From Takakia lepidozioides (lineage: Eukaryota > Plantae > Bryophyta), in contig CM060731.1 of NCBI GenBank assembly GCA_030704615.1, forward strand, positions 32,550,001 to 32,614,000: a stretch of DNA of 64,000 nt. Direction: 5' to 3'. Under the pieces are notes generated by a model. It did no database searches, was not told where the DNA came from, and saw only the letters and a list, made by a program, of their open reading frames with translations. Each line of letters starts with the position of its first letter. Within the stretch, counting starts at the first letter, position 1. Made by a program: the position numbers and the translations under genes. Below are positions 39,001 through 64,000 of this stretch, piece by piece.

Positions 39001-39154
39001 AAGACGTGGGCGAAGTAAAGTCGCCCTGTCTCCTGCCATGGGACGCCATGGTACGGAAACAAACTCCTTGATGTGGGACGCCACAACTTGGATGTTCGTT
39101 TCTACAAAATGGACAAGTCGATGAGGACATCGACTCCCCGTTGGTAGGGGTGTG

Positions 39155-39872
39155 TGTCGCAGCCCTTTGCCTTGAGGGCAGGGGGTCAGGACACATGAGG
39201 GGCTGCCCCTGTGGTGGGGGCAGCGGCAGCGATAGGTATGGGGGGCTGAAGCACCCTTGAGTGCCCAAGGCACTCAAGGAGGCGGAGGCGCTCACTAGGT
39301 GGAGCCCCGCACACCGGGTTGCGGTGGGGGTGGCTCCACAAGGGGTGGTGGTAGCTTAGCGGGACTTAGTGGGGGTGGCATAGGACTCACCATGGGGGCG
39401 GAGACCTCGTGGTGGGAGTCGTGGGGAGTCTTAGGACTCATCACGGTCCATAGGGGCCGTGGTGAGTGGGCCAAGACTCACCGCGACTCATCGGGAGTCG
39501 AGGGTTTTCGTGGTGGTTCGCCATAAAATGGCATGGCTGGTTGTGAAACCCCCGCGGACAGCTACAGAAGTATATATAAGGGGAGTAGTGACCCCGAGAA
39601 CGGTGCAAGCCCGTTGGTGACCAAAAACTAGTGAGTAAGCGAGCGAGCCGTAAAACGACCAAAGAGTGGGGGAGCTGTTCTGGACTGCCATCTACCAAAG
39701 GGAATTCCACTAGGCCCAAATAAGTGGAGGGTTTAGTGGGAGATCGAAGGGGGACCGTTATGTCCCGGTGAGCAGCCGAAGCTCCAAGTTGGCCCGGCGG
39801 CCAGGTTGGGAGTCAGGCGCGCGCATCAAAGCGAGTAACTATGACTTGAAGGGGAGCTTACCGAAGTGAGGT
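39155..39872 (+). mobile_element. 3' LTR of the chromovirus, inverted relative to the 5' LTR
   Basis: Reverse-complement near-copy of 45927-46654 (several substitutions and a 3-bp indel). Starts TGTCGCA after a purine tract (TGGTAGGGGTG). The terminal few bases are disrupted. Confidence 0.9.
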
Positions 39873-39899
39873 GCACTTTATGCGACTCCGATCAAAACC

Positions 39900-40010
39900 A
39901 CACAGACCAAGGTACTTCGACATTACCCACTCAATATCAATTTTTCAATGATGTCTTCGAGAAGAAAAATGCAGACATGTTGCCAGAACAACGACCTTAT
40001 GATTGTGCAC
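39900..40010 (+). mobile_element. Stub of pol (RT N-terminus) from the Tcn1-like host element
   Basis: Translates LPTQYQFFNDVFEKKNADMLPEQRPYDCA, the conserved gypsy pre-RT motif. Confidence 0.7.
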
Positions 40011-42299: not shown

Positions 42300-42526
42300 A
42301 TGTCTTTTTTTACCTTCCCCAGCTTGCTGGCGGGTCATGCCCCAATTGCAGCGACGTACCTGAATCGCAAGCTGGCGAAGCGTCACCGGAGCGGCGTTGC
42401 GGCGACGTGCCGACGTCGCTATTTCCGGGCCGAGCGCCTACGCGGCGCAGCAGTTGCAGGAGAGTCGTCGCGTCTGGCGCGCTCGGGGTCCCGGCGTCGC
42501 TAACCCCCCCCCTAAACGTAGTAGTG
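42300..42526. mobile_element. Single CACTA (En/Spm)-like terminus with GCGACG/CGTCGC subterminal repeats
   Basis: Ends ...CCCCTAAACGTAGTAGTG (reverse complement CACTACTACG). No partner end or 3-bp TSD was found. Confidence 0.55.
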
Positions 42527-42759
42527 TTTCTAACAGACTAATATCCCAAAAGACAAAGTATCTCATATGCGGCCGGGTGATATGGGAGTAGAGGCTGAAC
42601 CGTAAACCGCACTTTCTGTCTGAGTTCGAACGCGGCGCGAGATCACTGGCGCCCCTTCCCGCCGTCGTTGCATTAATAGGTCCAGCAGACTTACACGTGA
42701 TCATAATGACGGCTCAACAGACCCAGCGCAAACAGACTTGCACCACAACAGACTGACTC

Positions 42760-45700
42760 CCGCCGTCTCGCCCTTGTACACCAACAAGAGCTGCTGCTTT
42801 CTACTTAGAGCATCGGCCACCACGTTGTCTTGTCCCGGTTTGTATTGGATATCCACGTCGAACACCACCAAAGTATCTTGCCACCTAAGTTGTTTTGGGG
42901 ACAACTTGGGCTGCGTGGCAAAATACTTCACCGTGACATTGTCCGTGAACACCTTCAATGGGTTGGAACCAACATAGTGGCGCCAAAGCTCAAGACAGTG
43001 CACCACCGCCTTCATCTCTTTCTCGTGCGTTGGCCACCGTCGCTCCACTTCATTCAGTTTCTTACTTTCGTAAGCCACTGGACGTCCATCTTGCATTAGT
43101 ACACCCCCAATCGCGAAGTCCGATGCATCTGTATGTATCTCAAACGGACGATCGAACTCCGGGATTTTCAAGACTGGAGCTTCCGCCATCCGCTGCTTCA
43201 ATTCAGCAAAAGCTTGGCCACAAAAGGTGTTCCATGCCCAGACTTTAGATTTACACAGAAGGTCTGACAGCGGCCCCGCGATTTTGGCGAAATTTCTCAC
43301 ATACTTCCGGTAATAGGAGGCGAGTCCTAGGAATGATCGCACTCCCGGGACCGAAGTCGGAGGCTCCCAGTCCAAGATCGCCCTCACCTTTCTGTCATCC
43401 ATTTTGATCCCATCCTGTGTAATCACATGCCCCAGGAACTCCACTTTTGTGACCCCGAATTCGCACTTTGAAGCTTTGGCATACGCTTCCCTTCTCGCAA
43501 TTTTTGGAACACCCTTTTCAGGTGCTCCAGGTGCTCCTCCTTTGTTTTCGAGTACACCAAGATGTCGTCGATGTACACGATCACAAAGTCATCCAACCAC
43601 TCCTAGAAAAGGCTGTTCATCAGCGTGCTAAATGTCGTTGGTGCATTGGTGAGCCCAAAAGGCATCACCAAGAACTCATATGAACCATACCTTGTCCTGC
43701 ACGCGGTCTTCTCCTCATCTACTTCCGCCACCCGAATTTGATGATAGCCGGAGCGCAAGTCGATCCGGCTGAAATACTTCGCTCCTGCCAATTGATCGAA
43801 GAGGTCGTCGATCCTTGGCAAATGGTACCAGTTTTTGATAGTCACCTTATTCAGAGCCATGTAATCGACACACATCCGCAGCGTCCCATCCTTCTTGTCT
43901 GCAAATAGCACCGGGGCTCCGTAAGGTGACTTATTCGGCCGGATGTACCCCTTTGGCATTAGATCCTTGAGCTGAGTCTTCAGTTCGACCAACTCTCTAT
44001 GGCTCAACCGGTAGGGCGCCTTGGCAGGCGGTTCCGATCCCGGTATCACCTCAATCTTGTGGTCAACTCCTCTTCGCGGTGGCAAGCCGCTTGGCAAATC
44101 CTCCGGCATCACATCATGGTATTTCTCCAAAATCCCCTTGATCCAATCTGGGCTTGGCTCTCTATCGCCTTCTCCCTTCACTTCTCTAATGTAGAGCAAA
44201 AACTGGGGCTCGTGTGCCTCCTCCACGGCCCACTCCATTGCTGACGGGAGGTTTATTCGCCCTCCCACGGGTCTGGGTGTTTCCGAAACTCGTAAGACCT
44301 CGCCACCATTCCAACATGGCAGCGTGACTACCCTCTTGCGGCCATCTATGACCGCTCCGGATTTGCTCAAAAAGGTCATCCCCAAAATGAGATCCACTCC
44401 ATCGATCTCGCAGACGGTGAAGTTCTCACGTCCCTCCCAACTCCCTAGTTGAAGAGGAACATTGAACGCCAACCTCGTCGCCGATTGCGGTTCTCCTTTG
44501 GCAGAACGCACCTCAATAGAGGCCCCTACGTCAGTTGTCGGGAGTCCCAGCTTTTGTGTCGTTGCCGATGTCATGAAGGAGTGCGACGCTCCTGTGTCCA
44601 CCAACAATGACACGTTAGTTCCGGATATTATCCCATCCACGAACAATAAGTGACTCCTTTTACGCAATGCGCTAGTTTTCTGATACAACTCACAAGAATA
44701 TTTGCCTACCTTGCAAGTCCTGGCGACCACCGCTTCCACCAAGCGACTGATGGTATCTTCCGACAGCTCTGTGGTTGCCCGAGTCATGTTCAATTGTCGG
44801 GGCTTCATGCACTTCTTGGCCATGTGCCCGGGCTCCCCACAATTGAAACACACTCCATCAAAGGTTGCCTTCTGTCTGCCATAGGCCGCTTTACCCGCTT
44901 TTCCTTTCGAAGCACCGGGTGCCGCCTTGACTTGTGATGGCCCTCCCTTCGATTTCTACGTGCCATTGTCGCCGCGTGGCCTATCCCACTTCTTTTCCGG
45001 TCGGAAGGAGTCACCTTCCCGCCGGGTCTTCCTGTGGTTCAGCTTCGTACGGCCTTGTCTTTCACCCCTAGGGACATCTGAGAAACATTCAGCCCTCTCA
45101 ATTGCCTCGTTCAAAGTCTTAGGTGGCTTCTCCTCCAACTTCCGCCTGGCCCATGGGGCCAGTCCCGCCACAAAGTTGAAGACCATTTCCGGTTCTGCCA
45201 TGTCCGCGACTTCGAGCAAAAGCACATTGAAAGCCTGGACATATCCCCGAATGTCGTCTGTTTGCTTCAAATTCCTCATCTTGTCCCGGGCAAGCCAGGA
45301 CGCATTGAGGGGCACAAACTGTCTCTTCATCAATTCCTTGAACCCACTCCAGTTCAAGGTTTCCGGACTTGGACCTCGGTCGTGAAGGCGTTTTCTGCCA
45401 CCATTGTTGAGCATAGCCTCTCAAATAGGTGGGAGCCACTTCCACCCGATCCTCGTCACTCAACTTGGCCGCCCGGAAGTACTACTCTAGCTCCAAGAGC
45501 CAGGTGTTGAGTGCCTTCCGATTTCGGACGCCCTCGAAGGTGTCGGGTTCCTTAGGCTTCACCTTAAACTTTGCCTTAGTGGAAGTGGCATTAGCCGCCC
45601 TCAACACGTCTTTCAGCGTCCCGCCAAACTGCGCCAACAACCCTTCCCAAAAGGCTGCCGGCATGGGAGGCATCTGTTGGTCGGTCGGAGCTCTCACGGA

Positions 45701-46654
45701 TTCCTCGGGCTCCGACTCCTCGGATTCCTCCCGCTCTTGAGCGGCCTCGTTTTCGGAAACGTGCATCGCTCCCTCAAACGGCCGCCTCGGTGACACGTCG
45801 CCCCCATCGGGCTCACCAGGATCATCATCTTTTGGGCCGTTCCGCTTTTGCTTTGGCTTGCCCGACCCCATGATGAGGCCAATCCCAAGGACGATCGCGT
45901 ACTGAACTCTAGGCTTTGATACCAAGTGTCGCGTACCTCACTTCGGTAAGCTCCCCTTCAAGTCATAGTTACTCGCTTTGATGCGCGCGCCTGACTCCCA
46001 ACCTGGCCGCCGGCCAACTTGGAGCTTCGGCTGCTCACCGGGACATAACGGTCCCCCTTTGGTCTCCCACTAAACCCTCCACCTATTTGGGCCTAGTGGA
46101 ATTCCCTTTGGTAGATGGCAGTCCGGAACAGCTCCCCCACTCTTTGGTCGTTTTCCGGCTCGCTCGCTTACTCACTAGTTTTTGGTCACCAACGGGCTTG
46201 CACCGTTCTCGGGGTCACTACTCCCCTTATATATACTTCTGTAGCTGTCCGCGGGGGTTTCACAACCAGCCATGCCATTTTATGGCGAACCACCACGAAA
46301 ACCCTCGACTCCCGGTGATGAGTCGCGGTGAGTCTTGGCCCACTCACCACGGCCCCTATGGACCGTGATGAGTCCCAAGACTCCCCACGACTTCCACCAC
46401 GAGGTCTCCGCCCCTATGGTGAGTCCTATGCCACCCCCACTAAGTCCCGCTAAGCTACCACCACCCCTTGTGGAGCCACCCCCACCGCAACCCGGTGTGC
46501 GGGGCTCCACCTAGTGAGCGCCTCCGCCTCCTTGAGTGCCTTGGGCACTCAAGGGTGCTTCAGCCCCCCATACCTATCGCTGCCGCTGCCCCCACCACAG
46601 GGGCAGCCCCTCATGTGTCCTGACCCCCTGCCCTCAAGGCAAAGGGCCGTGACA
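42760..46654 (-). mobile_element. 5' half of a Ty3/gypsy chromovirus: 5' LTR, PBS, gag, PR, RT, RNase H (frameshifted)
   Basis: LTR 46654-45927 with TG..CA ends. tRNA-iMet-type PBS TGGTATCAAAGC at 45924-45913. gag with [14 protein letters not shown], protease [20 protein letters not shown], RNase H HTDASDFAIGG...VADALSRK. Breaks off at ~42760. Confidence 0.95.
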
Positions 46655-50320: not shown

Positions 50321-51060
50321 CAGGCAGACATATTCGACTCGGGCACACAGTCAATAAATGAGCATGAAAGGGCTAGACTGAGGGGGCACAAAAATAGAAA
50401 CAAACTGGACCGACCTCTGGTTTTGGATAGCCGAGACATGACACAACCATGTCTCATACATGAGGACACAATCAAAGGACTTTGCTGGATTCCTTACTAC
50501 AAAATAGACCCAAAAGCACAACCCAAACCTATGTTATTACGTAAAAGTACAAAAATCTCCAAGTGACTCAATAATGTTCCAGCTGGCAAACACCCATGCT
50601 ATCTGTGAATGTGCTGTACCAGGGGCGCCCCAGCACACTACCACAAGAACACATGAACACATTGCAGAACACACTACCACAACAGAAATTGACAATATAC
50701 TTCCCATACAAAAAAGTTTTTATTATCTCAGTTAAAGAATTTAAATTGGCAGACTTATTTGACCCTGGCACTCAGTCAATAAATGAGCTTGAAAGAGCTA
50801 GACTTAAGGGGCAAAAAAAGAGAAACAAATTGGACCGACCTCTGGTCTCGGATAGCAGAGACATGACACAACCATGTTTCATACGTGAGGACACAATCAA
50901 AGGACTCTGTTCGATTCAGCTACTACAAAATAGACCTAAAAGCACAACCCAGACCTATGGTATTACGGAAAAGTACAAAAATCTCCAAGTGACTCCAGTC
51001 GGGTCAATAAAGTTCCGGCTGGCAAACACCCGTGCTATCTGTGAATGTGCTGTACCAGGG
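50321..51060. repeat. Tandem duplication (~420 bp) of the QS terminal codons and 3' region; the distal copy is split by the MULE
   Basis: 50321-50625 matches 50746-51060, and 34990-35089 matches ~50640-50745. Confidence 0.88.
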
Positions 51061-54000
51061 CCTCTGACAACCTTCCCGTCGCCTGCAAATATCAAACCCA
51101 CATAAATCCTCCTCATGCATAAAATTCATAACTTCCCATGCTCCAGCTCTTTAAAGCACATGAAAAGACGTCAAATAGGATCACCGTACCTCTTTCAGAA
51201 CCCATCCTGAAGTCAGGCTCTAGGAAAGCTATATGGTAAGAGTAAGTACCTGAAAGTGGCGCATGTGAAGAATGGGCTCGCATCCAAGATCTGCCACCTT
51301 CTGCCCAGCTATTTCAGCTGTGAACACACGTGCACGGTTGGCAGCCAGCAATTGCTCGCCTGGAGTTTTCACGAGTCGACAGACTCGGAGCAAGGAGTCC
51401 AAAGAATTCATCTGAGCACCCATCACAGCCAATCCCAACGATCCATGTACAGTGAGCCATGTTTGTGTACTACATTGTCTGTAGCGGTGCTTTCGGAAAC
51501 CCCAACTGATGTCACCCCTCACATAAGTTCTTTCACTATCAATGTAGAAAACTGATAGGAGTAGGTTTAATGAAGTACCACTTACTTGGAAGTCAGAGAA
51601 TATCAAAAGAGTAAAACCATGAACAAGAAACAGGGTTTACTAAGCCTCACTTTTTAAGTTCGTCTGGATCCAGCGTGGCATAATTGACTCAGTCAGCGAC
51701 CAAGACAACCTGACAACAATCCATTGGAAATGCAACAATTCTACGAGAAATACTGACCTTCATGTATGGACATGAAGCACAGCCTCCATTAAGCGAGCAG
51801 CCTTCTCCAGAAGCCACTCCTGGAACAATTGGCAGCTTTGCCAAAGATGATTCATACCCCACAGTCTGTTGTGAGGTTGATGTAGCACTGATGGCATCGG
51901 AAGAAACTGGGAAGACAATTTCCACCTCAACATTTACCTCTCTGTCATTGGCTTTAGCTTGACCCTGCTCTAAAAGCTTGCGCACAGCTCCTACAATTGC
52001 TGTGATCATACCAGATTCTGTTCCCAACACGAACTGGAGACGGTCGTCAAAGCCACGGTCTAATGATTCTTGCACATGCAGCTGAATGAAGTCTAGTATG
52101 TTTTGTGTAGATCCAACTACTCCCCTACCCCGCTGTTTGGCCTCCATTGCTAGTGCAAACATCTCCCCGGGGACCTCAAAGTGGGCTGTCTGATACGCAT
52201 CCCCATAGCCTTGTCGAACTCTATCCACCACATCCTTACCAAACAGATCATGCACCATGCATGACCCATCCTGCAAATATTCAACATTACCTTTCAGTCA
52301 AACGCAGAATTAGAGAACAGAGGCATTATTTCATTGCATGCTCCGTGATTCAAAGCCACCAAAGCACATCTCTCCAGGAATAATGCACAAAAGACCTCTC
52401 TGATACTGCACAACTGGTTGATGCCCAAGTGTATGTTCAGCTAGAACTTGGACCTCTCCATTGTTTTACAATTAAGTTGTTGAGGAACAAAGATAGGGCA
52501 GAGTGTATTTCTCAGAGGGGAGTCTGAACCTGCACTCCAGTTGTCATCCCTTTGCCACGGTAGTGATGATCAAGACACAACCTAAGCTTGTAATCTTCAT
52601 AGGGGCAGAATCTTCCTAAATGTCATGCAGGAGTTGACAACTTTGCAAACCACCCTCACACTCATATGCTGACCAACTTTACATATTAGACTACTACTTT
52701 ACATAATAGACCAGATAATATACTCACTGCTACCATCAAAAATTCCATCGCAACCAAACTCTGAACACCTTGAACTTGAGCTTGAACAGAAAGGCGAAAA
52801 GCAAGGGAACGGACCTGGAAGTAGTGAAGACGGGGTAAGAGTGCAGCAATGGTACGCCTTGTGTGCAAAGGATGCACAGCCTTTATCTCATCATCACTCA
52901 GAGCCAGCATCTGCTGAAACATCTCCACCAGGTTTGCGCCCATGTACGAATCTGGGCCATACCATACAGTCACGTCTGGCACTTGGGCAAATGCCTGCAC
53001 CAACCATCCAATAGCCCATATCAGTGCTGATCCCAAGGGGGCAGATGACATAGTTTCAATCTTTCGCCCTCATAACCTTTACTGACAAATTTCCATTGAT
53101 TCAGTGAGCATACACTTGTCTTCCACCCCCCTTCGTCAGTCCCTTCCATTTCAACACCACAAAACCTGATCCACAACCAAGACCTGACAGTAGAAGACAC
53201 TTAGTAAATATCAACCAGCAAAAATAAAACGCAACCAACCTTAGGGAGGGGGACAAAGCCAAGGACTCAACCTGCAGCACGGTTTGCACTACGTTGGATG
53301 ATGTGCACGTAATGGTGGGGACCAAAGCATGAGCATGCGCCTTTGTCTCAAGTGATGTATTGATGTAAATCACATGCAGTGATGCCGGAGTTGCCGATGC
53401 TGCATTCAAAAACTTAAGATAGGTGGGACTCTCAGCTGCCTCTGCCAAAGAGCATCCAATATGATCTGCTGACATGCGAAATACCCCCACCTATAACAAC
53501 CATCCAACCAGTCCAGTTAGTGCGATCCAGGGAGTCACTCTCCCATTAACAAGAAATTATCCAATAGGTATATGGAAGTGACCTTCAAAGTTAGAAAGAA
53601 GGTGCTCCCCCAGAGCAGATCTCTGGGCCAACTACACAGGACCTTGACTGGACTGGGGCAAGACACTAGGTTCTGGGACCCATGTAAGAGCCCAAATCCT
53701 CTCTGTATCTATGGGATAAAGGAGATAAGGACAACAAACCCACCTGCTGATGCTCGGCACGATCAAGGATGGCTCTCACGTTTTCAGCCATGAAATCCAC
53801 TCCTAACACTGCAATATGCTGGCAACCGGCATTCGCCATCTTGACAGCACGGTCAGCCATCACCAATGAATCTGAGATATGGATGTGCGGCCATATCTTT
53901 TGAGCTGCTACAAGCACCCCTTGCACCTCAGGGTCCATGTAGAAGTGTGCTACCACACCTATCTGTTTCTGCTTCAGCAGCTCTGCTAGCTCCAGCACTT

Positions 54001-56071
54001 TTGTTGTGTCAGGCATCAAGTACTTAACCTGCAGCATCCATGTTTCACATACAATGAGTCAAACAGGACACATCCAGTTAGTCAAGCATGATAGTCCACC
54101 AACTCCATATTCCTATGTAGTGATTGCTGCTCCCACAGCTGATTATTAAGCTCATAGTTGCAAAACAAGGGCAGTGACAGCCTACAATAGAACTTGACCG
54201 TTCCCAGACCAGTTAACCACCCTAACCATAATGAAATGCAGCCAACTGAACGTTGTGAGAAAACCCCAACCTTAGTTCAGACCCTACCATATTTCTATGT
54301 AATTCGTATCTCCAATTCAATGCTAGCAAGCAAATACCAACAAAGAAGTCATACAACACAAATGCACCCTGTGGGCCATGAAACCTAACTGACAAATTTG
54401 CCACGACTAACATGCTGCATGCGGCTGGGTGGACTATGTCAACATAAACCAAATTCTTAAGTGCAGCTGCCTGCAATGTGGCAACCACTTGGCTATCTTG
54501 TGGAAGCTCGCTAAACAAAATGCTAGCCAATCAGAGATCTAACTAGCCACACCAACTGCACATATGGGAGACCCAAATTAATGTCCCAACCCACTACCTC
54601 AATAGAAGCCTCAAGTTCATGGAGAAAAAGCCCAAAAACCTGGAGGACCCCTAATCATGGTAAACTCAAATGAGTCTGTCCACAACAAACATGGTCAATA
54701 CAACACCCCAATTTGGTTTCCGTCAAGAGAAATGCCCACCTGGGCTTCAGCAAAATCCCCCTGTGCCTTCACATCATTAGCTGTGACAAGAAGAGAAGGG
54801 AATGGCTCAAAGGGCGCAAGGCCAGCCCGCTGTGCAGCGAGCATACTGGTACGTTTCTGCATAGTGAGGAGTACATTGTACCAGGTGTTAGAGCGTGATT
54901 GAGCCTCCATGCCAATGCCCAGCCCTCTCAGGGTGTCTGCTGGCACTGCCAGCACATGTTCAGGTAAACTCCCATTAAGCGCCTGCAGCAGTAGTGCACA
55001 TAGCCCTCGTGTAACCTCTGCATCACTGTCTGCCCCAAAGTAAACTCTGCCATCGGCGCCAAGTTTCACTGTGATCCACACCTGTACCCAGAAATTATTT
55101 GCACTGAGAGGTTAACAATATCTCTGACCAAGTTTGCTTCAACTACTAGCTAATCTCTGCCTGGGCACCACAAGAACAACAAAGATTCTTTTGAGACAGC
55201 CAAAACTTGACACTCACAGACCAACATGACAAAGCTAACCTCGTTGCATAACTTTGAGTGCATGGGATATACAACACTGAATTTTTCCAAACCTGCGCTG
55301 TGCAACCCATGACCCGATTTGCTGGGACATGTGCCTCTGGCGGTAGGCGTGGCAGCCGCGCGGCGTACTGCAACACTCGCTGCATCCGAGAGCGAATATC
55401 CTTCAGCTTCGAGATCTCCTCAACCAGCCGCTGCAACTTGTCAGCCCCACCCTCTTCCTGGCCAGCTGATGACATGACATCATGCTCAATGAGAGCGCAT
55501 CTAGCATTGCCCTGCAGGATTTTGCAGTTGGGTGTAAGAAGATGGAAACTTCGCTTGATCTCCTCCTAGTACTCTTCGCAAAGTATTTGAAAACAAAATT
55601 GACTGCCCTGTAAACACCTATTCCATCCAGCGAGTGAATCAAAGCAGCTCCTGCGAACATTCTCGCAATAACCTCTGGATTCTTTCCTCGATGTAAACCG
55701 CACCCACAAAAGGTTCCTTGCAGCGCTCGACCATATTGACAATTCTCTGTTGAATCCCCTCGCTAGTCTGTAGATGTTTATACAACCCACAACCAAATTC
55801 CAAACGCTAAACAACAAAAAATATAACTCACCCCACATCTAGCGACATTGTACTCCGAGCATCCATTGCGGTCTACAAACTTGCCTACCCTTCTTGATGA
55901 GCGGCCTGCGTAAATCCCACATCCTTGCACCAACGGCATCATTTGAGGTGTAGCCTTCAAAGCAGAAGAGGATGTGCCCGCCTGCGTGCATGAGCGAGGG
56001 CCTACAGCGTTGGCCAGCACGGTCGCGCCCACAACCTCCCTCACCACCGCCATCGACCCCAACACCACCAT
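51035..56071 (-). CDS. QS: Quinolinate synthase, plastid (SufE domain fused to NadA), 9 exons, ~753 aa
   Basis: Exons 56071-55832, 55565-55293, 55081-54740, 54028-53744, 53490-53272, 52994-52815, 52270-51758, 51411-51250, 51082-51035. SufE motif NRVMGCTAQVW. NadA motifs VAHFYMDPEVQ, ISDSLVMA, LGVDFMAE, YINTSLETKA, GTESGM. Three Fe-S cysteines in GCSLA, GSCMVH and CPYMK. Confidence 0.96.
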
Positions 56072-56619
56072 GGTGCCGGCCACGCCAAGCAGAGGCCCCT
56101 AAACGCTTGACCTCAATTACTATCACGCCCAGCCCACAACCACATGCACAGGGAAGGCACGCAGTGCAGTAGCTAAGGAGCTAATGCCCCTCAACCCTCG
56201 GCAGTGTGATGCACGCGTGGCTGCCAGCAGAAGTTACACAAACACAGTGATCAAAGCCAATCCGCAGCGAACAAACGCAGACCACCAGCCCCGCCACGGA
56301 TAGCTTGGTTGAGAAGCTAGAAAGCGACACTGCTACAAATGTGGTGGAGCAGTCTGGAGACAAGACAAAGTGAGACACTGGTGTACTGGTCTCCGATCCA
56401 TGGCATAGGGGCAGCAGCAGGTCAAGGTAGGTGCGGACGAGAAGCAAGGCTGGCAGCTTCTAGCGCTGCTGCTGGGGACAGCAGCAGTTTCTTTCCGCCC
56501 TTCCGTGTCTGTCCACGTACCTCCCGAGCCCTTCATCTGGATCTTGCGGTCTCTTTTGAATGACCCCACCCAAGCTTTCAGCAAACTAGAAAGATTCTGA
56601 TTCCACAAGATTCAGAAAG

Positions 56620-59600
56620 TTTCATGTGTTTTCTATATTATGATGCTCCCGAGTCCCTCCACTTTCTTCCAGTCCTCTTCACATCCTCAGAGGGTTCATC
56701 ATTGCAGCACTGCAAAGATGTGGATTCATCCGAGGCTGCACAGGGAAAGAGCAAGCGCCCCTTCCACTGTCATGCGTGTCATCTTCACGGCATCTTTGGA
56801 TATATGGATTACCTTAAATTAAGAACCATCACACGGAGCTGCCAGTGGTCAGACTTGGGCTTTCCAGATCGACACTCAACAACATGTCAACTCAGCTTGA
56901 AATTAAATTGCGCATCACAACCAGATCAATGCGCCCAGCGTCCCGACCTTTCTAATCTATACAAAAAGGAATGGCATCATTCATGCACCCACCCTACCCT
57001 TGTCTCTCAGGTTGTCTTTTTACGCGCATCAGAAGGCTTGCGCGACACCAGCGTACGTGTGCGGCTCTTTATCAGTCCCACACAAATGGTACTTCTTCAT
57101 TTCAGCCCAGTGTCTTGAACGCGCCACCTCCTGCCTCTGCTTGGCATTGGCTTTCAGCGCTAGATGTTCTGGGCGCATTTCAGCTAGGACTGCCAAGGCC
57201 TCGTCTTTATACAAGAATTCCGGTGGCACTACGTCATGAGGTCCAACTGACACTCCGTCTACCCTTAGACATGCTGGCTCGTGATCCTGATGATATACCA
57301 GCATGGTATTTTTCTTGTTATTTCCTCAGTGGTGTTTGGTTTTGCCCCCTCGTGGTGGTCAGTCAGGGCACAGAGAGACGCGCATCCGTCTTCGCCGTTT
57401 TTTATCTGGAGATTGAGAGAGTCTGCAAGATGCGCATCAATTACGGGCACTAGTTCTTGCGGCACGCGCCCCTCCCGCTTCCTCCATGCAGCCACCCTCA
57501 TCGGCCCACAGGCGACTTCGTCATAGTCTCATGTTAGGCCGCGTTGGCGAGTATTCACGCGCGACCAAGGCTTTAACACCTTCCTCACCAACGCCTCCAT
57601 AACCGGATACTGTTACTGCCTTCGAAGCCCTTCACCCATCAGCTCAGGATATTCTGCCGCTTTTTGTTGAGGACTTCGAGCCAGACCAGGATCTCGGGAG
57701 CTCTTCACTCAGGCCTTCACGCGCAGTCCCCATCTTGCAGCGGCAGGTCCTTCCGGTCTCCTGTATGAACACTTACGCGACTGTTTCTCTCCACAAGACT
57801 CTGCTAGTGGCTTCTCTCAGCTATTTCAGATTTGCTCATTTATTGCTGCTGGCCGTATTCCTGTCCCAGTGGCCCGTCTCCTTGGGGCCTCCAGATTGTT
57901 GGCTATGAGCAAACCCTCAGATACTGACATCCGCCATATCGCAGTTGGAGTGGTTTTTTACCGCCTTGTCAGCCACTCACTTTGTCTTCAGTTTCGAGAT
58001 GCCTTCTCCGGACACCTCTTTCCGCACCAGTTCGGGGTCGCCACTCCAGGCGGTTGCGAGGCGGTGGTTCAGGGGATTTGTGCAGCTCTTGATCTTCATC
58101 CGGATTGGGTGGTTCTCTAGGTCGACGTCACCAACGCTTTCAACATTGTGTCACGAGCGGTTATCTTTCAGGAGCTCCGTTCAGCTGGAGGAGATTTCCA
58201 CCAGCTCATTCCGTTTGTTCGATTATTCTATGCATCCACCACTCCCCTATACTACAGTCATCATTCTCACCTAGGTGAGTGCTCCATCATTCAGTTCAAG
58301 GTTGGGACCCGCCAAGACGACCCTTTAGGAGAACCTTTGTTTGCCATGGCTCATGTCCGCGCCCTCACGGTTTCTGCACAAGTTCACTCATCTTGTCTTT
58401 TTCCGTCGGTGGCAGACGACACGCACATTGTAGGCCCTGCCTCACAAGTACTTTCAACTTACTATCATTTTGTCACCCAACTCTCTGCCGTGGGCCTTTC
58501 AGTGCAACCTCGCAAATGTGCGGTGTGGTCTCCGTCCGGTCTTCTTGCAGATTTTGTCCTCCCTGCTCACTTCATTGCTCCGCCCAATGGCATCAGAATC
58601 CTGGGAGTCCCTTTTGGCACCACCCAGTTCACAACGTTCTTCTTGGAAGATGCACTCCACCAGGATGCCACCCACGCCGATCTCCTTCCTATGCTCGGAG
58701 ATGTACAGGTAGCATATGGAATCTTGACCAAATGTTTCCTTCAGCGTCCCTCATATCTCTTGCGTACTGTTCCACCCAGCCCAGATTTCCTACACCTCTT
58801 ATTTTGTGTTTGATACTACCATGATGACTATCTTCGGGAGATTGTTAGGACCAGAAGCTCTGGAGGGTGTTCAGGGACTTTTTCCACGACAGCAAGCCAC
58901 CTTGCCCGTCTCTTCCGGTGGTGTGGGTCTTTTGTCCACTGTCACTACCGCCCCGTCAGCTTTCCTCGGCAATTGGGCATTGGTGGCGCCAGCCCTCGCT
59001 TCACGATTTCTTTGTGACCATCGTCCCATCCTTATGGACGCCGTTGCACATGTCGATAGTGGCATTTTACCCTTCCTGCAGCATCTCCGCTCTGCACGAG
59101 ATCTTCTTCCGGCACCGGCGCGAACATGTCTACCACCATTTGAGTAGTTGGTTGCTCAAGGCCTCGACCATCTTCAGGAGTCCATTTCCGAGCGCGTGCA
59201 CCGTCGTTCCTTTTCCGACATGCTCTCAAGTGCTTCTTCTGAGTTGCATCGAATCCGACTTCTATCATGCGCAGGACCCGGAGCAGGGGCATGGTTGACA
59301 GCATGACCCACTATCGCACATTTTCGCCTCTCATCCCTTATTTTCACTACTGCGCTCCGCCTTCGACTCGGTTTGCCTCATCCTTCGGCATTGGGCCTTC
59401 AACGCTGCGTTTGTCTTCAGCCCATCGATGACCTTGTCATCCATCTCCTCCGCTGTCCATGTGGTGGTCAGCGCACTGCATCTCATGATATGGTTCGCGA
59501 TGCGGTGACATCTATTGCTCGGGAGGCAGGGTATCATGTACTGCGTGAGCAACCACATCTACGACCCACGCTCACGTCCCACTCTACACGCCGTCGTGTT

Positions 59601-60270
59601 GACATCGTCCTATCTAAAGATGGTTTGCGTACCTTAGCAGATGTCGTTCTCGCCGACCCCACTCGAGTGGATCTGCTATCTCGCGCAGCTACCACACTAG
59701 GCATGGCAGCCACTGTAGCAGCCCAGGCCAAGGAGCGCGACTATAGCGATCGTCACCCCACCGACACATTTCTTCCGCTGGCGGTCGAAATATTTGGCTC
59801 ATTACACCGGCACTTCGACGATTTCCTGCGGACATGTGCACATCATGCAGCCAAGAGCGGGTCCACTGGCATCCCACATGCCTCTGTCCTTGTCGCCTAC
59901 TATCGACAACGTGTTTCAGTTGCTTTGCAGAGAGCACATGTCATCTCTATTTTGCATCGGGCTGATGTGGCTAGCTCCGCGTCATCTTGTCTTCCGCCTC
60001 TGCCTGACACTTTGCCTATCTCCTTGCCTGATCTCCTCCAGGCTGTTGGCTGGGAGGGTCGTTCTGCTTGAGTAGTTTACTATAGCTTCTGTTTTCGTCG
60101 CTGGTTGAGTAGCTTACTATAGCTTTTGTTTTTTTCTCTAGCTGAGTAGCTTACTATAGCTTTTTGTTTTCTTCTCTTGTTTCTTGTTCTCCCCCCCCTT
60201 TTTGGGAACTTCACATCATATGCACGTTCATCCATTGTACATGTTGTAAATAAAGTCTTACAGGGTTTCA
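56620..60270 (+). mobile_element. CRE-clade-like non-LTR retrotransposon (RT plus C-terminal restriction-like endonuclease), inactive
   Basis: RT motifs RHIAVG..YRL, HQFGVATPGGCE, DVTNAFN, GTRQDDPLG, ADDTHIVG. CCHC region followed by HDMVRD, RVDIV, DVVLADP, AKERDY and FLPLAVEIFG (RLE). N-terminal Cys/His clusters. Multiple stops and frameshifts; boundaries approximate. Confidence 0.85.
60069..60170 (+). repeat. Three ~37-bp tandem repeats in the retroelement 3' UTR
   Basis: TGAGTAGYTTACTATAGCTT occurs three times, starting at the ORF stop codon. Confidence 0.85.
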
Positions 60271-61459
60271 TCATTTTCAATTGCTGCTCACAACAAAAAT
60301 AATTCGGAGTGCTGAGGGATCTCATGCTCATTTCCTTCGGTGATTATTAGTTATTAAGTACGCCTTTCGAGATCAAAGAGCAGCATTTGCTACTTGAATC
60401 GATTTAGGAGGTCTCATGGCTCGGATTATGCCATATGGGTGGCCATATCAAACCGTGTTTGTAGGCAAGATCATGTAAGGAATCTCTAAGTATTGAACGA
60501 TGATGCAGCAACCCACGACATCACAATCGACACATGCATTCAACCACCACACCTCACCCTCTCTGTTCGTTAAAAGTCCGCAGACCTTTTCTGCGCATTT
60601 CTGCTGTCTTGTTTGGTTGAAGTCACCTGTCAGGACACTGGACGCTGTACATAAAAGGCCCCGTGCCAGGCTACAGTAAGGTGAATCTGTACGTATCTAC
60701 AATAACTATTCATCTGACTCAAAGGGCGGCGGGTGGGCACCTGAGCCTGGAGATCCTTCGTGGGTCCTTTCTGATATGAGTAATAAAACTTATTAGTCTT
60801 CCTTTCCTGCTCCTAGCCTGACCTTCTCACATCGAAATTCCTGAGACACAGGGTTGGCAATAGAACTTCGGTCTTTTGCTGATGCCAAGTCGTCGGTTTT
60901 GTCCAAGTGGCCAGGATTTAATTCCGACCTGGAGTTTCGGTGGTGACAAATCCTTCAGAAACAGTGTGGCTGACATCCTTTCTTTTGGCAATCATACTGA
61001 GTCTACAACAGTTGACCCATTTACGATGCACTAACATTCTTCTGTGGGTATTTTCAGTAAAAGGGTAGTTGCTTCTTCCGAGCATTGAAGGGGCCCCACA
61101 GAAGTTGCTATATTTATCGCAATAAAAGCAGAGGGTGGCCATTCGGCACTCAGCCTCGAGCACAGCAAGACCTGAAAAGGAATTTCCACAGAATCTAGAC
61201 CCAAGGAGGACCACAGCTTCCTCGAGTGTCTCGAATTGAGCGGGTAGAGAGTCTTGCATGGTTTGGGAGACGGAAAGTGATCAGTGACTGGTTGCAAGCG
61301 TCTTTCAGAGAATTTAGACGGGCCGCGCTCTGGGAGTTCCTGAATTGAGCGAGTACTGGAGGTGGAAGTGTATTGTATCTGTCTGCTGGGTTCAAAAGGG
61401 AGAAGTGAAAGTTTGATGCATGTATTCACCTCGGATTTGATATCCAAGGCGGGGCCTAG

Positions 61460-61960
61460 CTTGGCCCATTGTGTGAAGGCGTTGAAGTGAGGGAATAGGT
61501 TGGCGGTCTATTTGCTTATTATAGAAGTAAGGTGGGCGGGGGGGCGGGGAGAGAGAGGATCTTTCGTCCTGTTTAGGCTGCGTATCTGCTCGGTCTTCTG
61601 CACCGCCGGCCCATCAGGTAAGCTGCCGTTTGGTTTGTGTGAAAGGGGGAAAATTCACTTGAGAGAACAGGAGCAGTGAGGTCGTGGAGAGACCTTCTTG
61701 TGGGGAGCAGTAGGCATGAAGATAATTTCTGTTTTGCAGTGACAACTGTATCGGAGACGATAATGTTTAGTTCTGGCAACTTTGATTCAAACTAGCCCTG
61801 CTTGGAAGTAATTGGATCGTCTTCATTCTCCTGCCTCTTGCTCCTTCTTCTTCATGCTTTGACGCACGCCACGCTGGTCTCTTAACTAACGATTTTTTGA
61901 TCATTGCGCCTTTGGCATTCGTGCTGCAGGGAAGTTGGTTGATTGGCTTCTTTCTACAGG
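61460..61960 (+). promoter_or_regulatory. Putative AO core promoter and 5' UTR intron
   Basis: Site II-like GGCCCA at ~61463, AT-rich TTATTATAGAA at ~61516, strong donor CAG|GTAAG at 61618 and acceptor TTCTACAG| at 61959. Confidence 0.5.
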
Positions 61961-62010
61961 AAGATATCTGCGGATCTGGTTTGCAAGAGGGAAGAAGGAG
62001 GAGCCATGCC

Positions 62011-64000
62011 ATGCAAACAGTAGGCATGGCAAGCGAAGGGGGGATCCCTGCCGTGCGCCAATCCCCTATGTCCATCGTCGCCTCGTTGCAGGCACGCCCT
62101 CAAGGTGCCCTAGTGTTCCGTAACAAGGCTCCCCGAGGCACCGGTGTCTGTAACTCTGACCTTGTACTGAAAGCCTCCATATTGCGTGGGTTGCACACTC
62201 TGTACTCTCCTCCCCAGTTGCTGAAGCTTATGGCACTGGGAAGAACTTGGAACAGTTTCAGATCGATTGCAGGGCAGTGGAGACCAGTAGTCCAGGCTGA
62301 GACTTATGGACAGGAGTATGAACAAGGAGGCCACCTACAGGTGAAGAAGAATGAGTGGCTACAAGGGCCCACTCTGCACAAGGGAATGCCTGAGACTCCG
62401 CACAATTGCAGCCATGTGGGCAATCACATGGAGATAGGGCACTGGGATACTGGAAAAGTGTTGGGAAAATCCCTGGCAGGTTTTCAACCTGTAATGGGTT
62501 CTGTTGATGATTTGCATGAAGGGGCACTGAAATCTGATCGCAGCGTTGAAAGCAACCTGACAAGGCACTTCGATTTTTTGGTGATAGGGAGTGGTGTGGC
62601 AGGCCTGAGATATGCACTTGAAGTGGCTAAGTTTGGGTCGGTTGCGATTGTGACAAAGTCGGAACCTCATGAGAGCAATACAAATTATGCTCAGGGGGGT
62701 GTGAGTGCAGTCTTGGACCCATCCGACTCTGTGGAAAGCCATATCCAGGATACTATTATTGCAGGGGCGTTCCTGTGTGATGAAGAGACAGTTGAGGTGG
62801 TCTGTCGAGAGGGTCCTGAGCGAGTGAGGGAGTTGATGGCATGGGGTGCCCTGTTTGATCAGAGTGAGGATGGACAGCTGCACTTGGCAAGGGAAGGGGG
62901 CCACTCTCACCATCGAATTGTGCATGCGGCTGATATGACAGGACGAGAAATTGAACGAGCCCTTCTTACTGCTGCTCGCACTAATCCCAACATTGTCATG
63001 TTTGAACATCACTTTGCTGTGGATCTGCTCACACTTCAGGAAGGAGCAACTGTAATCTGCTATGGCTTGGATGCTCTGGACATAAGAAATCAAAAGGTGG
63101 TGCGCTTCATTGCTGGAGTAACTATGCTGGCTTCAGGCGGAGCAGGTCATATTTATCCAACCACCACTAATCCTTTGGTGGCAACTGGCGATGGGGTGGC
63201 TTTGGCACAACGGGCACATGCAGTGGTTTCAAATATGGAGTTTGTGCAATTTCATCCCACAGCCTTGGCTGACGAGGGATTACCAATCAGGCCCGAGAAA
63301 CGGGAGAATGCTTTCCTCATAACTGAGGCAATGAGGGGTGCTGGGGGAATCCTCTACAATCAGAGTATGGAGAGATTTATGCCTCTCTATGATTCGCGAG
63401 CAGAGCTGGCACCTCGTGACATGGTAGCCCGGAGTATTGATGACCAGCTGAAGAAACGTAATGAAAGATTTGTGTACCTTGACATTAGCCACAAACCACG
63501 AGATGAAATTCTGTCCCATTTTCCTAATATTGCAGCGGAGTGCTTACAGTATGGAATTGACATAACCAAGCAACCTATACCAGTAGTTCCTGCGGCTCAC
63601 TATATGTGTGGGGGGGTGCAAACTGGGCTACTTGGAGAGACCTCAATTGTGGGGCTTTTTGCTGCAGGGGAAGTCACCTGTACTGGCTTGCATGGAGCAA
63701 ATAGATTGGCTAGCAACTCCTTGTTGGAAGCGTTGGTGTTTGCACAGAGAGCTGTGGGACCATCAGTTGACCATGCTCTGAAAGTGGGAGGTGGACAGCG
63801 AGAGACCGATGAGGCCAAGGAGTGGCCACGACCAGTTGTGGCAGTATCCTTGATGGACTTCCAGGTAGAGGAGGTACTTCGAGTTACAGCTCTCCAACGG
63901 AAGCGGCTGCAGCAAATAATGTGGGACTATGTGGGCATTGTCCGATCAACAGAGCGCCTTCAAGTTGCACAGGCAGAGTTGGGTGAACTTGAACATGAGT
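62011..64000 (+). CDS. AO: L-aspartate oxidase, plastid (NadB); partial, runs off the window end
   Basis: Uninterrupted frame from ATG 62011. FAD motif FDFLVIGSGVAGL, NTNYAQGGV, LAREGGHSHHRIVHAADMTG, TTNPLVATGDG, EFVQFHPT, LITEA.RG, ELAPRD, PAAHYMCGGV, GLHGANRLASNSLLE. It is absent from the ORF track, presumably because no stop lies in the window. Confidence 0.97.
   Translation, partial: MQTVGMASEGGIPAVRQSPMSIVASLQARPQGALVFRNKAPRGTGVCNSDLVLKASILRGLHTLYSPPQLLKLMALGRTWNSFRSIAGQWRPVVQAETYGQEYEQGGHLQVKKNEWLQGPTLHKGMPETPHNCSHVGNHMEIGHWDTGKVLGKSLAGFQPVMGSVDDLHEGALKSDRSVESNLTRHFDFLVIGSGVAGLRYALEVAKFGSVAIVTKSEPHESNTNYAQGGVSAVLDPSDSVESHIQDTIIAGAFLCDEETVEVVCREGPERVRELMAWGALFDQSEDGQLHLAREGGHSHHRIVHAADMTGREIERALLTAARTNPNIVMFEHHFAVDLLTLQEGATVICYGLDALDIRNQKVVRFIAGVTMLASGGAGHIYPTTTNPLVATGDGVALAQRAHAVVSNMEFVQFHPTALADEGLPIRPEKRENAFLITEAMRGAGGILYNQSMERFMPLYDSRAELAPRDMVARSIDDQLKKRNERFVYLDISHKPRDEILSHFPNIAAECLQYGIDITKQPIPVVPAAHYMCGGVQTGLLGETSIVGLFAAGEVTCTGLHGANRLASNSLLEALVFAQRAVGPSVDHALKVGGGQRETDEAKEWPRPVVAVSLMDFQVEEVLRVTALQRKRLQQIMWDYVGIVRSTERLQVAQAELGELEHE

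What the first reader, a model, noticed from the sequence alone, without database searches (positions are those of the whole stretch)
51035..64000. Head-to-head QS-AO pair: a candidate NAD de novo biosynthesis mini-cluster in a plant nuclear genome
Seen: QS (minus, ATG 56071) and AO (plus, ATG 62011) are immediate divergent neighbours, separated only by leader/promoter DNA and a decayed ~3.6-kb retrotransposon; removing it leaves ~2.3 kb between start codons. Known: AO makes iminoaspartate, a chemically unstable intermediate that QS condenses with DHAP to give quinolinate. The enzymes are unrelated in sequence, nadA/nadB are often operonic in bacteria, and the Arabidopsis genes (At5g14760, At5g50210) are not adjacent. 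Inference: tandem duplication cannot explain this adjacency, so it may be a selected, co-regulated primary-metabolism gene pair on a bidirectional promoter. Both genes have the plant-type architecture (N-terminal targeting extensions, SufE-fused spliced QS), which argues against a recently acquired bacterial operon.
Basis: partly seen in the sequence, partly recalled or inferred. Interest (0 to 1): 0.9.

Follow-up and report, generated by a model that had tools for sequence, protein, structure and literature searches.

The report
Head-to-head NAD genes in a moss
Two consecutive enzymes of NAD synthesis really are divergent neighbours in this moss genome, but eight other land plants lack the pairing, so it is more likely a leftover of how the moss aspartate oxidase gene was assembled next to quinolinate synthase than a conserved co-regulated cluster.

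Summary
An intact 9-exon SufE-NadA quinolinate synthase (QS, minus strand, ATG 56071, stop 51035) and an L-aspartate oxidase (AO, plus strand, open from ATG 62011 to the window end) are immediate divergent neighbours. The 5.9-kb spacer holds only a decayed reverse-transcriptase element.

The "selected, bidirectional-promoter mini-cluster" reading is not supported. QS and AO are not adjacent in Physcomitrium, Ceratodon, Sphagnum (both AO paralogues and the QS locus), Marchantia, Calypogeia, Selaginella, Diphasiastrum or Adiantum. The start codons are too far apart for a classical bidirectional promoter.

New evidence links the two genes historically in mosses:
- Moss AO has lost all introns of its enzyme part; Marchantia has seven coding exons.
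- In Physcomitrium/Ceratodon-type mosses, AO exon 1 is built from the start of QS exon 1 plus the tail of QS exon 7, apparently using the same splice-donor position.
- In another moss, a decayed QS exon 4 lies just upstream of AO.

My best reading (about 45%) is that the adjacency is a relic of early physical QS-AO linkage. Chance is about 30%, and a selected co-regulated pair about 15%. The scan holds one other note on this AO gene.

The parts
51035..56071 (-). Quinolinate synthase gene (SufE-NadA, plant type), 9 coding exons, about 735 aa
   Evidence: Pfam SufE and NadA on exon ORFs. Colinear tblastn with P0193 and P0478. GT-AG junctions all in phase 0 and stop at 51035.
55832..56071 (-). 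QS exon 1: N-terminal extension, presumed plastid transit peptide. It begins with the moss QS motif (VREV..TVLANA).
   Evidence: ATG in a CACCATGG context and a GTGAGT donor. The N-terminus is shared with Ceratodon QS P0481, P0478 and L097. The targeting function is inferred.
54740..55511 (-). QS exons 2-3 encoding the SufE domain (5' end of exon 2 uncertain, 55565-55511)
   Evidence: PF02657 at E 2e-9 and 2e-15. Junctions.
51035..54028 (-). QS exons 4-9 encoding the NadA domain. Conserved Cys motifs lie in exon 5 (..IGCSLAEA..) and exon 7 (..GSCMVH.. and ..GGCASCPYMK).
   Evidence: PF02445 hits. Exon translations. The last mini-exon, 51082-51035, matches the C-terminus of moss QS P0478.
56072..56950 (.). 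QS-side spacer: QS leader and presumed promoter
   Evidence: No ORF with a domain and no RNA family. The boundary with the inserted element is set by the AT-skew shift and is approximate.
56950..60175 (+). Decayed retrotransposon fragment, non-LTR type inferred. RT-like ORFs are in shifted frames and the element ends in a 3 x 37-nt tandem repeat (60064-60174).
   Evidence: ORFs 57869-58120, 58148-58813, 58806-59147 and 59373-60071. Atlas features give RVT_1 at 0.95. The second ORF matches unnamed clusters scattered across eukaryotes. No LTR-like direct repeats. Unique in the window. No Pfam hit.
60176..62010 (.). AO-side spacer: AO leader and presumed promoter
   Evidence: No domain, RNA family or tRNA. 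The frame upstream of the ATG is closed at 61785.
62011..64000 (+). L-aspartate oxidase gene: a single open frame of 663 codons that runs off the window end
   Evidence: Translation without a stop. FAD_binding_2 at E 6.5e-92. 5kxj/1chu at E 1e-113. 80-87% identical to moss AO proteins.
62011..62487 (+). Lineage-specific N-terminal extension of AO (159 aa), with no detectable relative among other moss AO N-termini or in QS
   Evidence: Similarity to Sphagnum AO starts only at 62488. No Pfam hit. Shuffle tests against QS are not significant. Whether it holds an intron is unknown.

Best explanation
The window holds two intact, presumably plastid-targeted genes for the first two steps of de novo NAD synthesis, placed head to head in a moss genome. 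The pairing is specific to this lineage and is not a conserved cluster. Today each gene most likely runs from its own promoter, because an old retroelement insertion of about 3.2-3.6 kb has been tolerated between them.

The adjacency is most likely a historical trace. In the moss stem lineage AO became a processed, intron-less gene that had to recruit 5' sequences. In the Physcomitrium/Ceratodon clade it recruited them from QS itself: the start of exon 1 fused to the tail of exon 7, which ends at the position of the exon-7 splice donor. In a third moss lineage a decayed QS exon 4 still lies upstream of AO. Such fragments are most simply produced by local duplication, so QS and AO were probably physical neighbours in early mosses. 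This early-branching lineage has kept that neighbourhood.

Shown: both genes, their orientation, the non-conservation of the pairing, the intron loss, and the QS-derived AO exon. Inferred: that these facts share one cause, ancestral linkage.
For: - Genes and spacer.
- Organism: the AO tree places the window inside mosses (98/98), as a lineage separate from Sphagnum and from the clade L009 + L010-type + Physcomitrium + Ceratodon (98/96).
- Intron loss: Marchantia AO has 7 coding exons, whereas the enzyme part is one exon in the window, Physcomitrium, Sphagnum and L001/L009-L012.
- QS-derived AO exon 1, N-terminal part: the Ceratodon QS N-terminus aligns with the Ceratodon, Physcomitrium and L011 AO N-termini from the initiator Met over about 33 aa. 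Scores are 72-83, and 0 of 5000 shuffles reach them. The L097 QS N-terminus against AO exon 1 in L010-L012 gives E 5e-4, and against P. patens E 0.005.
- QS-derived AO exon 1, C-terminal part: the end of the same AO exon aligns with the tail of QS exon 7 (KLPIVPGVASGEG..K|gt). In L011 the distance to a phase-0 donor is identical. P is 0.0004 or less and 0.0055 or less. It is the top tblastn hit in the whole 64-kb window at E 0.004-0.04.
- Controls: Marchantia, Calypogeia, Selaginella, Diphasiastrum, Sphagnum and window AO N-termini are not significant against the moss QS P0478. In one search Marchantia gave one marginal value (p 0.005 against the exon-7 tail) that did not hold up.
- QS exon-4 relic: L009:203-379 lies on the same strand as AO and about 400 nt upstream. 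It carries a stop and indels and includes the intron-exon boundary. E is 4e-10 against the window and 8e-9 against P0478.
- The same two genes are therefore involved in two independent rare events within one plant group.
Against: - No QS-like remnant and no long inverted repeat lies between QS and AO in the window itself.
- The QS fragments in other mosses are on the same strand as AO, whereas the window's QS is divergent.
- In Physcomitrium, Ceratodon and Sphagnum the functional QS is not near AO, so the QS fragment could have come from a dispersed or whole-genome duplicate rather than from a neighbour.
- No flanking synteny links the window to the other loci.
- The window's own AO N-terminus is unrelated to QS.
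- The scan that flagged the pair looked at thousands of windows, so a chance adjacency is not excluded.
Confidence: 0.45

Rival explanations
1. Chance juxtaposition. QS and AO were brought together by ordinary rearrangement in a transposon-rich region, with no functional or historical meaning. The QS-derived AO exon of other mosses is an unrelated event.
For: The adjacency is absent from all eight other land plants checked. The neighbourhood is rich in transposons: a Ty3/Gypsy element at 38-46 kb, the element in the spacer, and MULEs just beyond the window according to unchecked scan notes. There is no QS remnant on the AO side of the spacer and no shared flanking genes. A genome-wide scan over many enzyme pairs makes one chance pair unsurprising.
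Against: It requires the same two genes, out of tens of thousands, to be joined independently by adjacency in one moss lineage and by exon capture or fragment insertion in two others.
Confidence: 0.3
2. One reading: a selected, co-regulated primary-metabolism gene pair driven from a shared bidirectional regulatory region. The benefit would be matching the supply of unstable iminoaspartate to QS.
For: Head-to-head orientation with nothing but leader DNA and a dead transposon between the genes. AO is considered rate-limiting, AO, QS and QPT all act in plastids, and each is an essential single-copy gene in Arabidopsis (PMC9085827). A natural single-ORF AO-QS fusion (P0213/L013, 1097 aa, FAD_binding_2 + Succ_DH_flav_C + NadA) shows that tight coupling is favoured somewhere. 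Capture of the QS 5' exon by AO in other mosses would also equalise targeting and perhaps expression.
Against: The pairing is not conserved, which is the usual signature of selection on gene order. The start codons are 5,939 nt apart, or more than 2.3 kb without the insert, far above the roughly 1 kb or less typical of bidirectional promoters. An old insertion splits the spacer without harming either gene. No QPT was seen among the large ORFs of the window. There are no expression data.
Confidence: 0.15
3. Assembly artefact: the two genes were joined through the repeat-derived spacer.
For: The junction runs through a transposon fragment, and no read evidence could be obtained.
Against: The element is unique within the window and degenerate, so it is not a collapsed young repeat. 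The sequence is continuous with no N runs in the stretches read, and composition changes smoothly.
Confidence: 0.03

Closest known systems
Bacterial nadB-nadA(-nadC) operons (for example the Bacillus nadBCA type; from general knowledge)
   Same: The same two consecutive enzymes are encoded side by side. The rationale is also the same, coupling an unstable intermediate.
   Different: The genes here are divergent, spliced, monocistronic eukaryotic genes with targeting extensions. Viridiplantae AO and QS come from different bacterial donors (PMC4217691), so this is not an inherited operon. In the 80 bacterial NadB loci most similar to plant AO, tblastn with the plant NadA domain found no NadA within the flanks fetched, even at E 1. 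The sensitivity of that test is uncertain.
Plant metabolic gene clusters and divergent co-expressed gene pairs
   Same: Non-homologous genes of one pathway are adjacent in a plant nuclear genome.
   Different: Only two genes are involved. They belong to primary rather than specialised metabolism. The arrangement is not conserved, the spacing is wide, and no co-expression has been shown.
Transit-peptide or 5'-exon acquisition by exon shuffling, as described for nuclear-transferred plastid genes (background in PMC8018952 and PMC7488351)
   Same: In Physcomitrium/Ceratodon-type mosses the AO gene took its first exon, including the N-terminal targeting region, from another plastid-protein gene.
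   Different: The donor is the next enzyme of the same pathway. The captured exon is an internally deleted QS copy (start of exon 1 plus tail of exon 7) that ends at the position of the QS exon-7 splice donor. I found no description of this in the papers searched.
AO-QS fusion protein P0213 (JGI sample 3300031522, contig of 3769 nt, locus L013)
   Same: It is a physical coupling of the same two enzymes, a Rosetta-stone type of link.
   Different: It is a single polypeptide (NadB part, then NadA part, no SufE) from an unidentified organism. It is not a gene pair, and its AO part is only 30-39% identical to plant AO N-terminal regions.

Membership tests
L-aspartate oxidase (NadB/AO) | FAD-binding domain of the succinate dehydrogenase/fumarate reductase flavoprotein type, with an N-terminal GSGxAG dinucleotide-binding motif | tested here: met
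   PF00890 at E 6.5e-92, covering the full model 1-414; motif DFLVIGSGVAG.
L-aspartate oxidase (NadB/AO) | Closer to solved L-aspartate oxidases than to SdhA/FrdA, with the conserved substrate and catalytic motifs | tested here: met
   5kxj, 1chu and 1knp at E about 1e-113, against 1e-69 for SdhA/FrdA. The motifs ELAPRD.VAR, HY.CGG and GANR.ASNSLLE are aligned and identical. Assigning these motifs to catalytic residues is from memory.
L-aspartate oxidase (NadB/AO) | Complete C-terminal helical domain | not testable with these tools
   The window ends after 33 of 130 positions of PF02910.
Plant-type quinolinate synthase (SufE-NadA fusion) | An N-terminal SufE domain fused to a NadA domain in one gene | tested here: met
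   PF02657 on exons 2-3 and PF02445 on exons 4, 5 and 7. The gene is colinear with the 716-736 aa plant QS proteins P0478 and P0193. The architecture is as described for AT5G50210 (PMC7332101).
Plant-type quinolinate synthase (SufE-NadA fusion) | Intact reading frame with canonical splice sites and the three conserved Cys motifs expected to bind the 4Fe-4S cluster | tested here: met
   Nine exons, GT-AG, all phase 0, 2208 nt. The Cys motifs are seen in the translations of exons 5 and 7. Their role as cluster ligands is from general knowledge. The joined protein was not searched or folded.
Operon-like plant metabolic gene cluster | Three or more non-homologous genes of one pathway in one neighbourhood | tested here: not met
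   Only QS and AO. No QPT-like domain among ORFs of 140 aa or more in the window, though this is a weak test for a spliced gene. Scan notes report an OSB gene and then MULEs beyond the window end.
Operon-like plant metabolic gene cluster | Gene order maintained across related species | tested here: not met
   No QS within 10 kb of AO in Physcomitrium, Sphagnum fallax (two paralogues), Marchantia or Selaginella. No AO within 10 kb of a Sphagnum-type QS. The genes are on different chromosomes or scaffolds in Ceratodon, Diphasiastrum, Calypogeia, Adiantum and Selaginella, judged by locus tags and record sizes.
Operon-like plant metabolic gene cluster | Co-expression of the members | not testable with these tools
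Bidirectional-promoter gene pair | Head-to-head orientation with start sites less than about 1 kb apart | tested here: not met
   The orientation criterion is met. The start codons are 5,939 nt apart, or about 2.3-2.7 kb after removing the inserted element. Transcription start sites are unknown.

The most novel reading that the evidence does not exclude
The head-to-head QS-AO pair is a living relic of how mosses rebuilt their AO gene. A processed, intron-less AO copy settled beside QS and at first lived off QS regulatory and targeting sequences. In later mosses a local partial copy of QS (start of exon 1, exon 4, tail of exon 7) became the 5' exon of AO, so AO carries the transit peptide of the next enzyme in its pathway. 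This lineage alone still shows the original neighbourhood.
Probability: 0.4. Interest if true: 0.65.

Novelty: new variant of a known kind. Interest (0 to 1): 0.5.

Why it matters
Adjacent genes for consecutive steps of primary metabolism are rare in plants, and the reasons for such pairs are debated. Here the pair is real but not conserved, which argues against an operon-like unit under selection.

The comparison did uncover a concrete, testable case of pathway partners becoming physically entangled. An essential plastid enzyme gene lost its introns in mosses. In one large clade it then took its first exon, including the N-terminal targeting region, from the next enzyme's gene.

This gives a natural experiment on three questions: how retrocopied genes acquire promoters and targeting signals, whether sharing them equalises expression and import of enzymes that hand over an unstable intermediate, and how gene neighbourhoods decay after such events.

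Tried and rejected
- Metagenome scan. I used them only to note that none has a NadA-like hit (sensitivity uncertain).
- Pfam on the spacer. It gave nothing on the spacer ORFs even at E 5. The transposon call therefore rests on language-model features and on the frame-shifted ORF layout.
- Structure search. A PDB sequence search with QS exon 7 alone found nothing.
- Flanking synteny. tblastx between the window and ten AO or QS loci found only artefacts and one Gypsy match.
- Remnants in the window. Searches for QS remnants or inverted duplication inside the window spacer were negative.
- Marginal control. The Marchantia AO N-terminus gave p 0.005 against the QS exon-7 tail. It did not hold against the moss QS P0478 (p 0.03, whole protein 0.30), so I treat it as noise.
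- Rejected: recent bacterial operon. Both genes are spliced or plant-type, and the tree places AO inside mosses.
- Rejected: an extra host gene in the spacer.
- Steps left out. Exons were searched one by one by reference, and only exon lengths and phases were summed. Complex prediction was not used, because the report does not rest on a claim that AO and QS bind.
Full report
**1. What is in the window**

On the minus strand, ORF pieces between 51.0 and 56.1 kb carry SufE (E 2e-15 and 2e-9) and NadA (E 2e-8, 2.5e-7, 2e-4) matches. A full-length angiosperm QS (P0193, 736 aa) and a full-length moss QS (P0478, 716 aa) align colinearly with nothing missing.

Homologue-guided choice of GT-AG junctions gives nine exons, all in phase 0:
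- 56071-55832
- about 55511-55293 (5' end uncertain)
- 55081-54740
- 54028-53744
- 53490-53272
- 52994-52815
- 52270-51758
- 51411-51250
- 51082-51035, a 16-codon terminal exon whose stop ends at 51035

The total is 2208 nt. The ATG at 56071 has a CACCATGG context, and exon 1 ends at a GTGAGT donor. I summed exon lengths and phases only.

On the plus strand, one frame is open from the ATG at 62011 to the last base of the window, 663 codons. The preceding stop ends at 61785. The ORF matches FAD_binding_2 at E 6.5e-92, and the start of the C-terminal flavoprotein domain is cut by the window edge. It matches solved L-aspartate oxidases at E about 1e-113, far better than succinate dehydrogenase or fumarate reductase flavoproteins.

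The 5,939-nt spacer holds frame-shifted RT-like ORFs on the plus strand, at roughly 56.95-60.17 kb. Protein-language features point to RVT_1 at 0.95, and a second ORF resembles unnamed clusters scattered across eukaryotes. The element ends in three 37-nt tandem repeats. It has no LTR-like direct repeats and no second copy in the window. Pfam, Rfam and tRNA scans of the rest of the spacer are empty.

The two genes are immediate, divergent neighbours separated by leader DNA and one dead retroelement.

**2. Which organism**

The closest AO proteins are as follows:
- An unnamed Logan contig (P0001/L009), 86%
- Sphagnum, 83%, two paralogues
- An unnamed moss group (P0004), 83%
- Physcomitrium and Ceratodon, 80-82%

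A maximum-likelihood tree puts the window inside a moss clade (98/98). That clade is an unresolved three-way split of the window, Sphagnum, and a clade made of L009 + L010-type + Physcomitrium + Ceratodon (98/96). The genome is thus a moss outside both Sphagnum and the Bryopsida-containing clade. I do not name a species.

**3. Is the adjacency conserved?**

I fetched up to 10 kb on each side of AO and searched the flanks with the window's QS exons and with moss QS.

| Species or locus | Locus id | QS near AO? |
|---|---|---|
| Marchantia polymorpha | L002/L003 | none |
| Physcomitrium patens | L004 | none |
| Sphagnum fallax, both AO paralogues | L006-L008 | none |
| Sphagnum-type metagenome contig (4.2 kb upstream available) | L001 | none |
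| Selaginella moellendorffii | L098 | none |

In the reverse direction, a Sphagnum-type QS locus with 10 kb on each side has PPR and GRAS neighbours and no AO (L094).

Locus tags and record sizes printed by the searches add further cases:
- Ceratodon: QS on chromosome 11, AO on chromosome 10.
- S. fallax: QS at 01G174500, against AO at 01G026200 and 02G169500.
- Diphasiastrum: chromosome 6 against chromosome 18.
- Calypogeia, Adiantum and Selaginella: different records.

In Arabidopsis, QS is AT5G50210 (PMC7332101).

No flanking synteny links the window to any of these loci.

**4. Bidirectional promoter?**

The orientation fits, but the spacing does not. The start codons are 5.9 kb apart, and still about 2.3-2.7 kb apart without the insert. 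An old, degenerate insertion sits between the genes. Both are intact, and in Arabidopsis the orthologues are essential single-copy genes (PMC9085827). This suggests that what each gene needs lies on its own side of the insert.

**5. An unexpected link between the two genes in other mosses**

(a) Intron loss. Marchantia AO has seven coding exons. In every moss locus examined, the whole enzyme-coding part is one exon preceded by short, lineage-specific 5' exons: one in Physcomitrium and two in Sphagnum. This is the pattern of a processed copy, or of cDNA-mediated intron loss, in the moss stem.

(b) AO exon 1 in the Physcomitrium/Ceratodon/L010-type clade. This exon encodes 79-81 codons.
- Its first 25-33 residues align, starting at the initiator Met, with the N-terminus of moss QS. 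For the Ceratodon QS against the Ceratodon, Physcomitrium and L011 AO N-termini, local scores are 72-83 and 0 of 5000 composition-preserving shuffles reach them.
- tblastn of the L097 QS N-terminus against all AO loci hits exactly the AO start codon region, at E 5e-4 in L010-L012 and E 0.005 in P. patens.
- Its last roughly 40 residues align with the tail of QS exon 7, around KLPIVPGVASGEG. This is the best tblastn hit of these peptides anywhere in the 64-kb window (E 0.004-0.04). Shuffle p values are 0.0004 or less and 0.0055 or less.
- In L011 the exon then ends, after exactly the same number of codons as in QS, at a phase-0 donor following a Lys codon. In P. patens the exon ends two codons later at the same kind of junction, mapped with a transcript contig.
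- Control N-termini from Marchantia, Calypogeia, Selaginella, Diphasiastrum, Sphagnum and the window's own AO are not significant against the moss QS P0478. In one search Marchantia gave one marginal value (p 0.005 against the exon-7 tail) that did not hold up.

So in this clade AO exon 1 is an internally deleted QS copy that apparently still uses the QS exon-7 splice-donor position.

(c) A QS exon-4 relic in L009. L009 is the sister lineage of that clade. A decayed copy of QS exon 4, including the intron-exon boundary and carrying a stop and indels, lies about 400 nt upstream of the AO ORF on the same strand. E is 4e-10 against the window exon and 8e-9 against P0478.

(d) A natural fusion. 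A single-ORF AO-QS fusion of 1097 aa exists on an environmental contig (P0213/L013).

**6. Interpretation**

Two rare events tie the same two genes together within mosses. One is the adjacency here. The other is the QS-derived DNA at the 5' end of AO in two other lineages.

If the two events were independent, that coincidence would be improbable. A common cause is simpler: early physical linkage of QS and the newly processed AO gene, followed by local partial duplication of QS in one descendant lineage and loss of linkage elsewhere. Several of these mosses have duplicated genomes.

I give this about 45%. It remains an inference for four reasons:
- The window has no QS remnant on the AO side.
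- The fragments in other mosses are co-oriented with AO, whereas the window's QS is divergent.
- A dispersed or whole-genome duplicate of QS could equally have donated the exon.
- No shared flanking genes were found.

Pure chance keeps about 30%. That model is compatible with the history above but has no positive evidence of its own. Misassembly keeps about 3%.

A bacterial-operon origin is excluded. Both genes have plant structure, and published phylogenies derive Viridiplantae AO and QS from different bacteria (PMC4217691, PMC7455551).

**7. Novelty**

The two enzymes and their plant architecture are well known. A divergent QS-AO pair, and especially an AO first exon derived from QS, were not found in the literature searched. 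Acquisition of targeting exons by shuffling is a known kind of event, and gene pairs of one pathway are known. This is a new variant of those.

**8. Earlier scan notes**

One other first-stage note on this genome claims that the window's AO N-terminus derives from exon 1 of an adjacent OSB gene beyond the window edge. I could not test that. It fits my finding that residues 1-159 are lineage-specific. Another follow-up called the genome a moss or liverwort, and the AO tree narrows this to a moss.

Noticed in passing
L013:254-3547 (protein P0213): A single ORF of 1097 aa fuses an L-aspartate oxidase part (FAD_binding_2 and Succ_DH_flav_C) to a NadA quinolinate synthase part, with no SufE. It lies on a 3769-nt contig of JGI sample 3300031522. 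The organism is unknown. The NadA part is 53% identical to the window QS.
   Followed up: partly
L004:10001-10243, L010:1617-1859, L011:244-486 and L012:425-667, compared with window 55832-56071 and 51758-51890: AO exon 1 of Physcomitrium/Ceratodon-type mosses is built from the start of QS exon 1 and the tail of QS exon 7, and ends at a phase-0 donor at the same position as the QS exon-7 donor. AO therefore carries the N-terminal targeting region of the next enzyme in its pathway.
   Followed up: yes
L009:203-379: A decayed copy of QS exon 4 with its intron-exon boundary lies about 400 nt upstream of the AO ORF (771-2576), on the same strand. It is on a Logan contig of an unidentified moss (SRR36092047).
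   Followed up: yes
L003:10001-13771 compared with window 62488-64000, L004, L007 and L008: Marchantia AO has seven coding exons. All mosses examined have the whole enzyme part in one exon, which suggests a processed copy or cDNA-mediated intron loss in the moss stem lineage.
   Followed up: partly
window 38081-45925 (-): A Ty3/Gypsy-type LTR retrotransposon (zinc knuckle, aspartyl protease, RVT_1, RNase H, integrase C-terminal and chromodomain ORFs) lies about 5 kb beyond the 3' end of QS. An F-box ORF (26823-27539) and a GNAT ORF (12933-13877) lie further away.
   Followed up: no
window 60064-60174: Three tandem copies of a 37-nt unit (100/84/70% identity) lie at the presumed 3' end of the decayed retroelement.
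   Followed up: no
Proteins P0128/P0148 residues 1-95 and P0122: The annotated Sphagnum AO models start with two small 5' exons unrelated to QS. A 79-aa member of the same 90% cluster is named as a LigB-family dioxygenase subunit, so these N-termini may come from another gene or from a merged gene model.
   Followed up: no
L014-L093: The 80 bacterial NadB loci most similar to plant AO (46-59% identity) show no tblastn match to the plant NadA domain within the flanks fetched, even at E 1. Either nadA is not linked to nadB in these bacteria, or the plant-type query is too divergent to detect it.
   Followed up: partly
Proteins P0485/P0487 compared with P0481, P0478, L097:605-787 and window 55832-56071: The QS N-terminal motif (VREV..TVLANAHS) is shared by the window, Ceratodon and several unnamed mosses, but not by Sphagnum QS, which starts with an unrelated sequence.
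   Followed up: no
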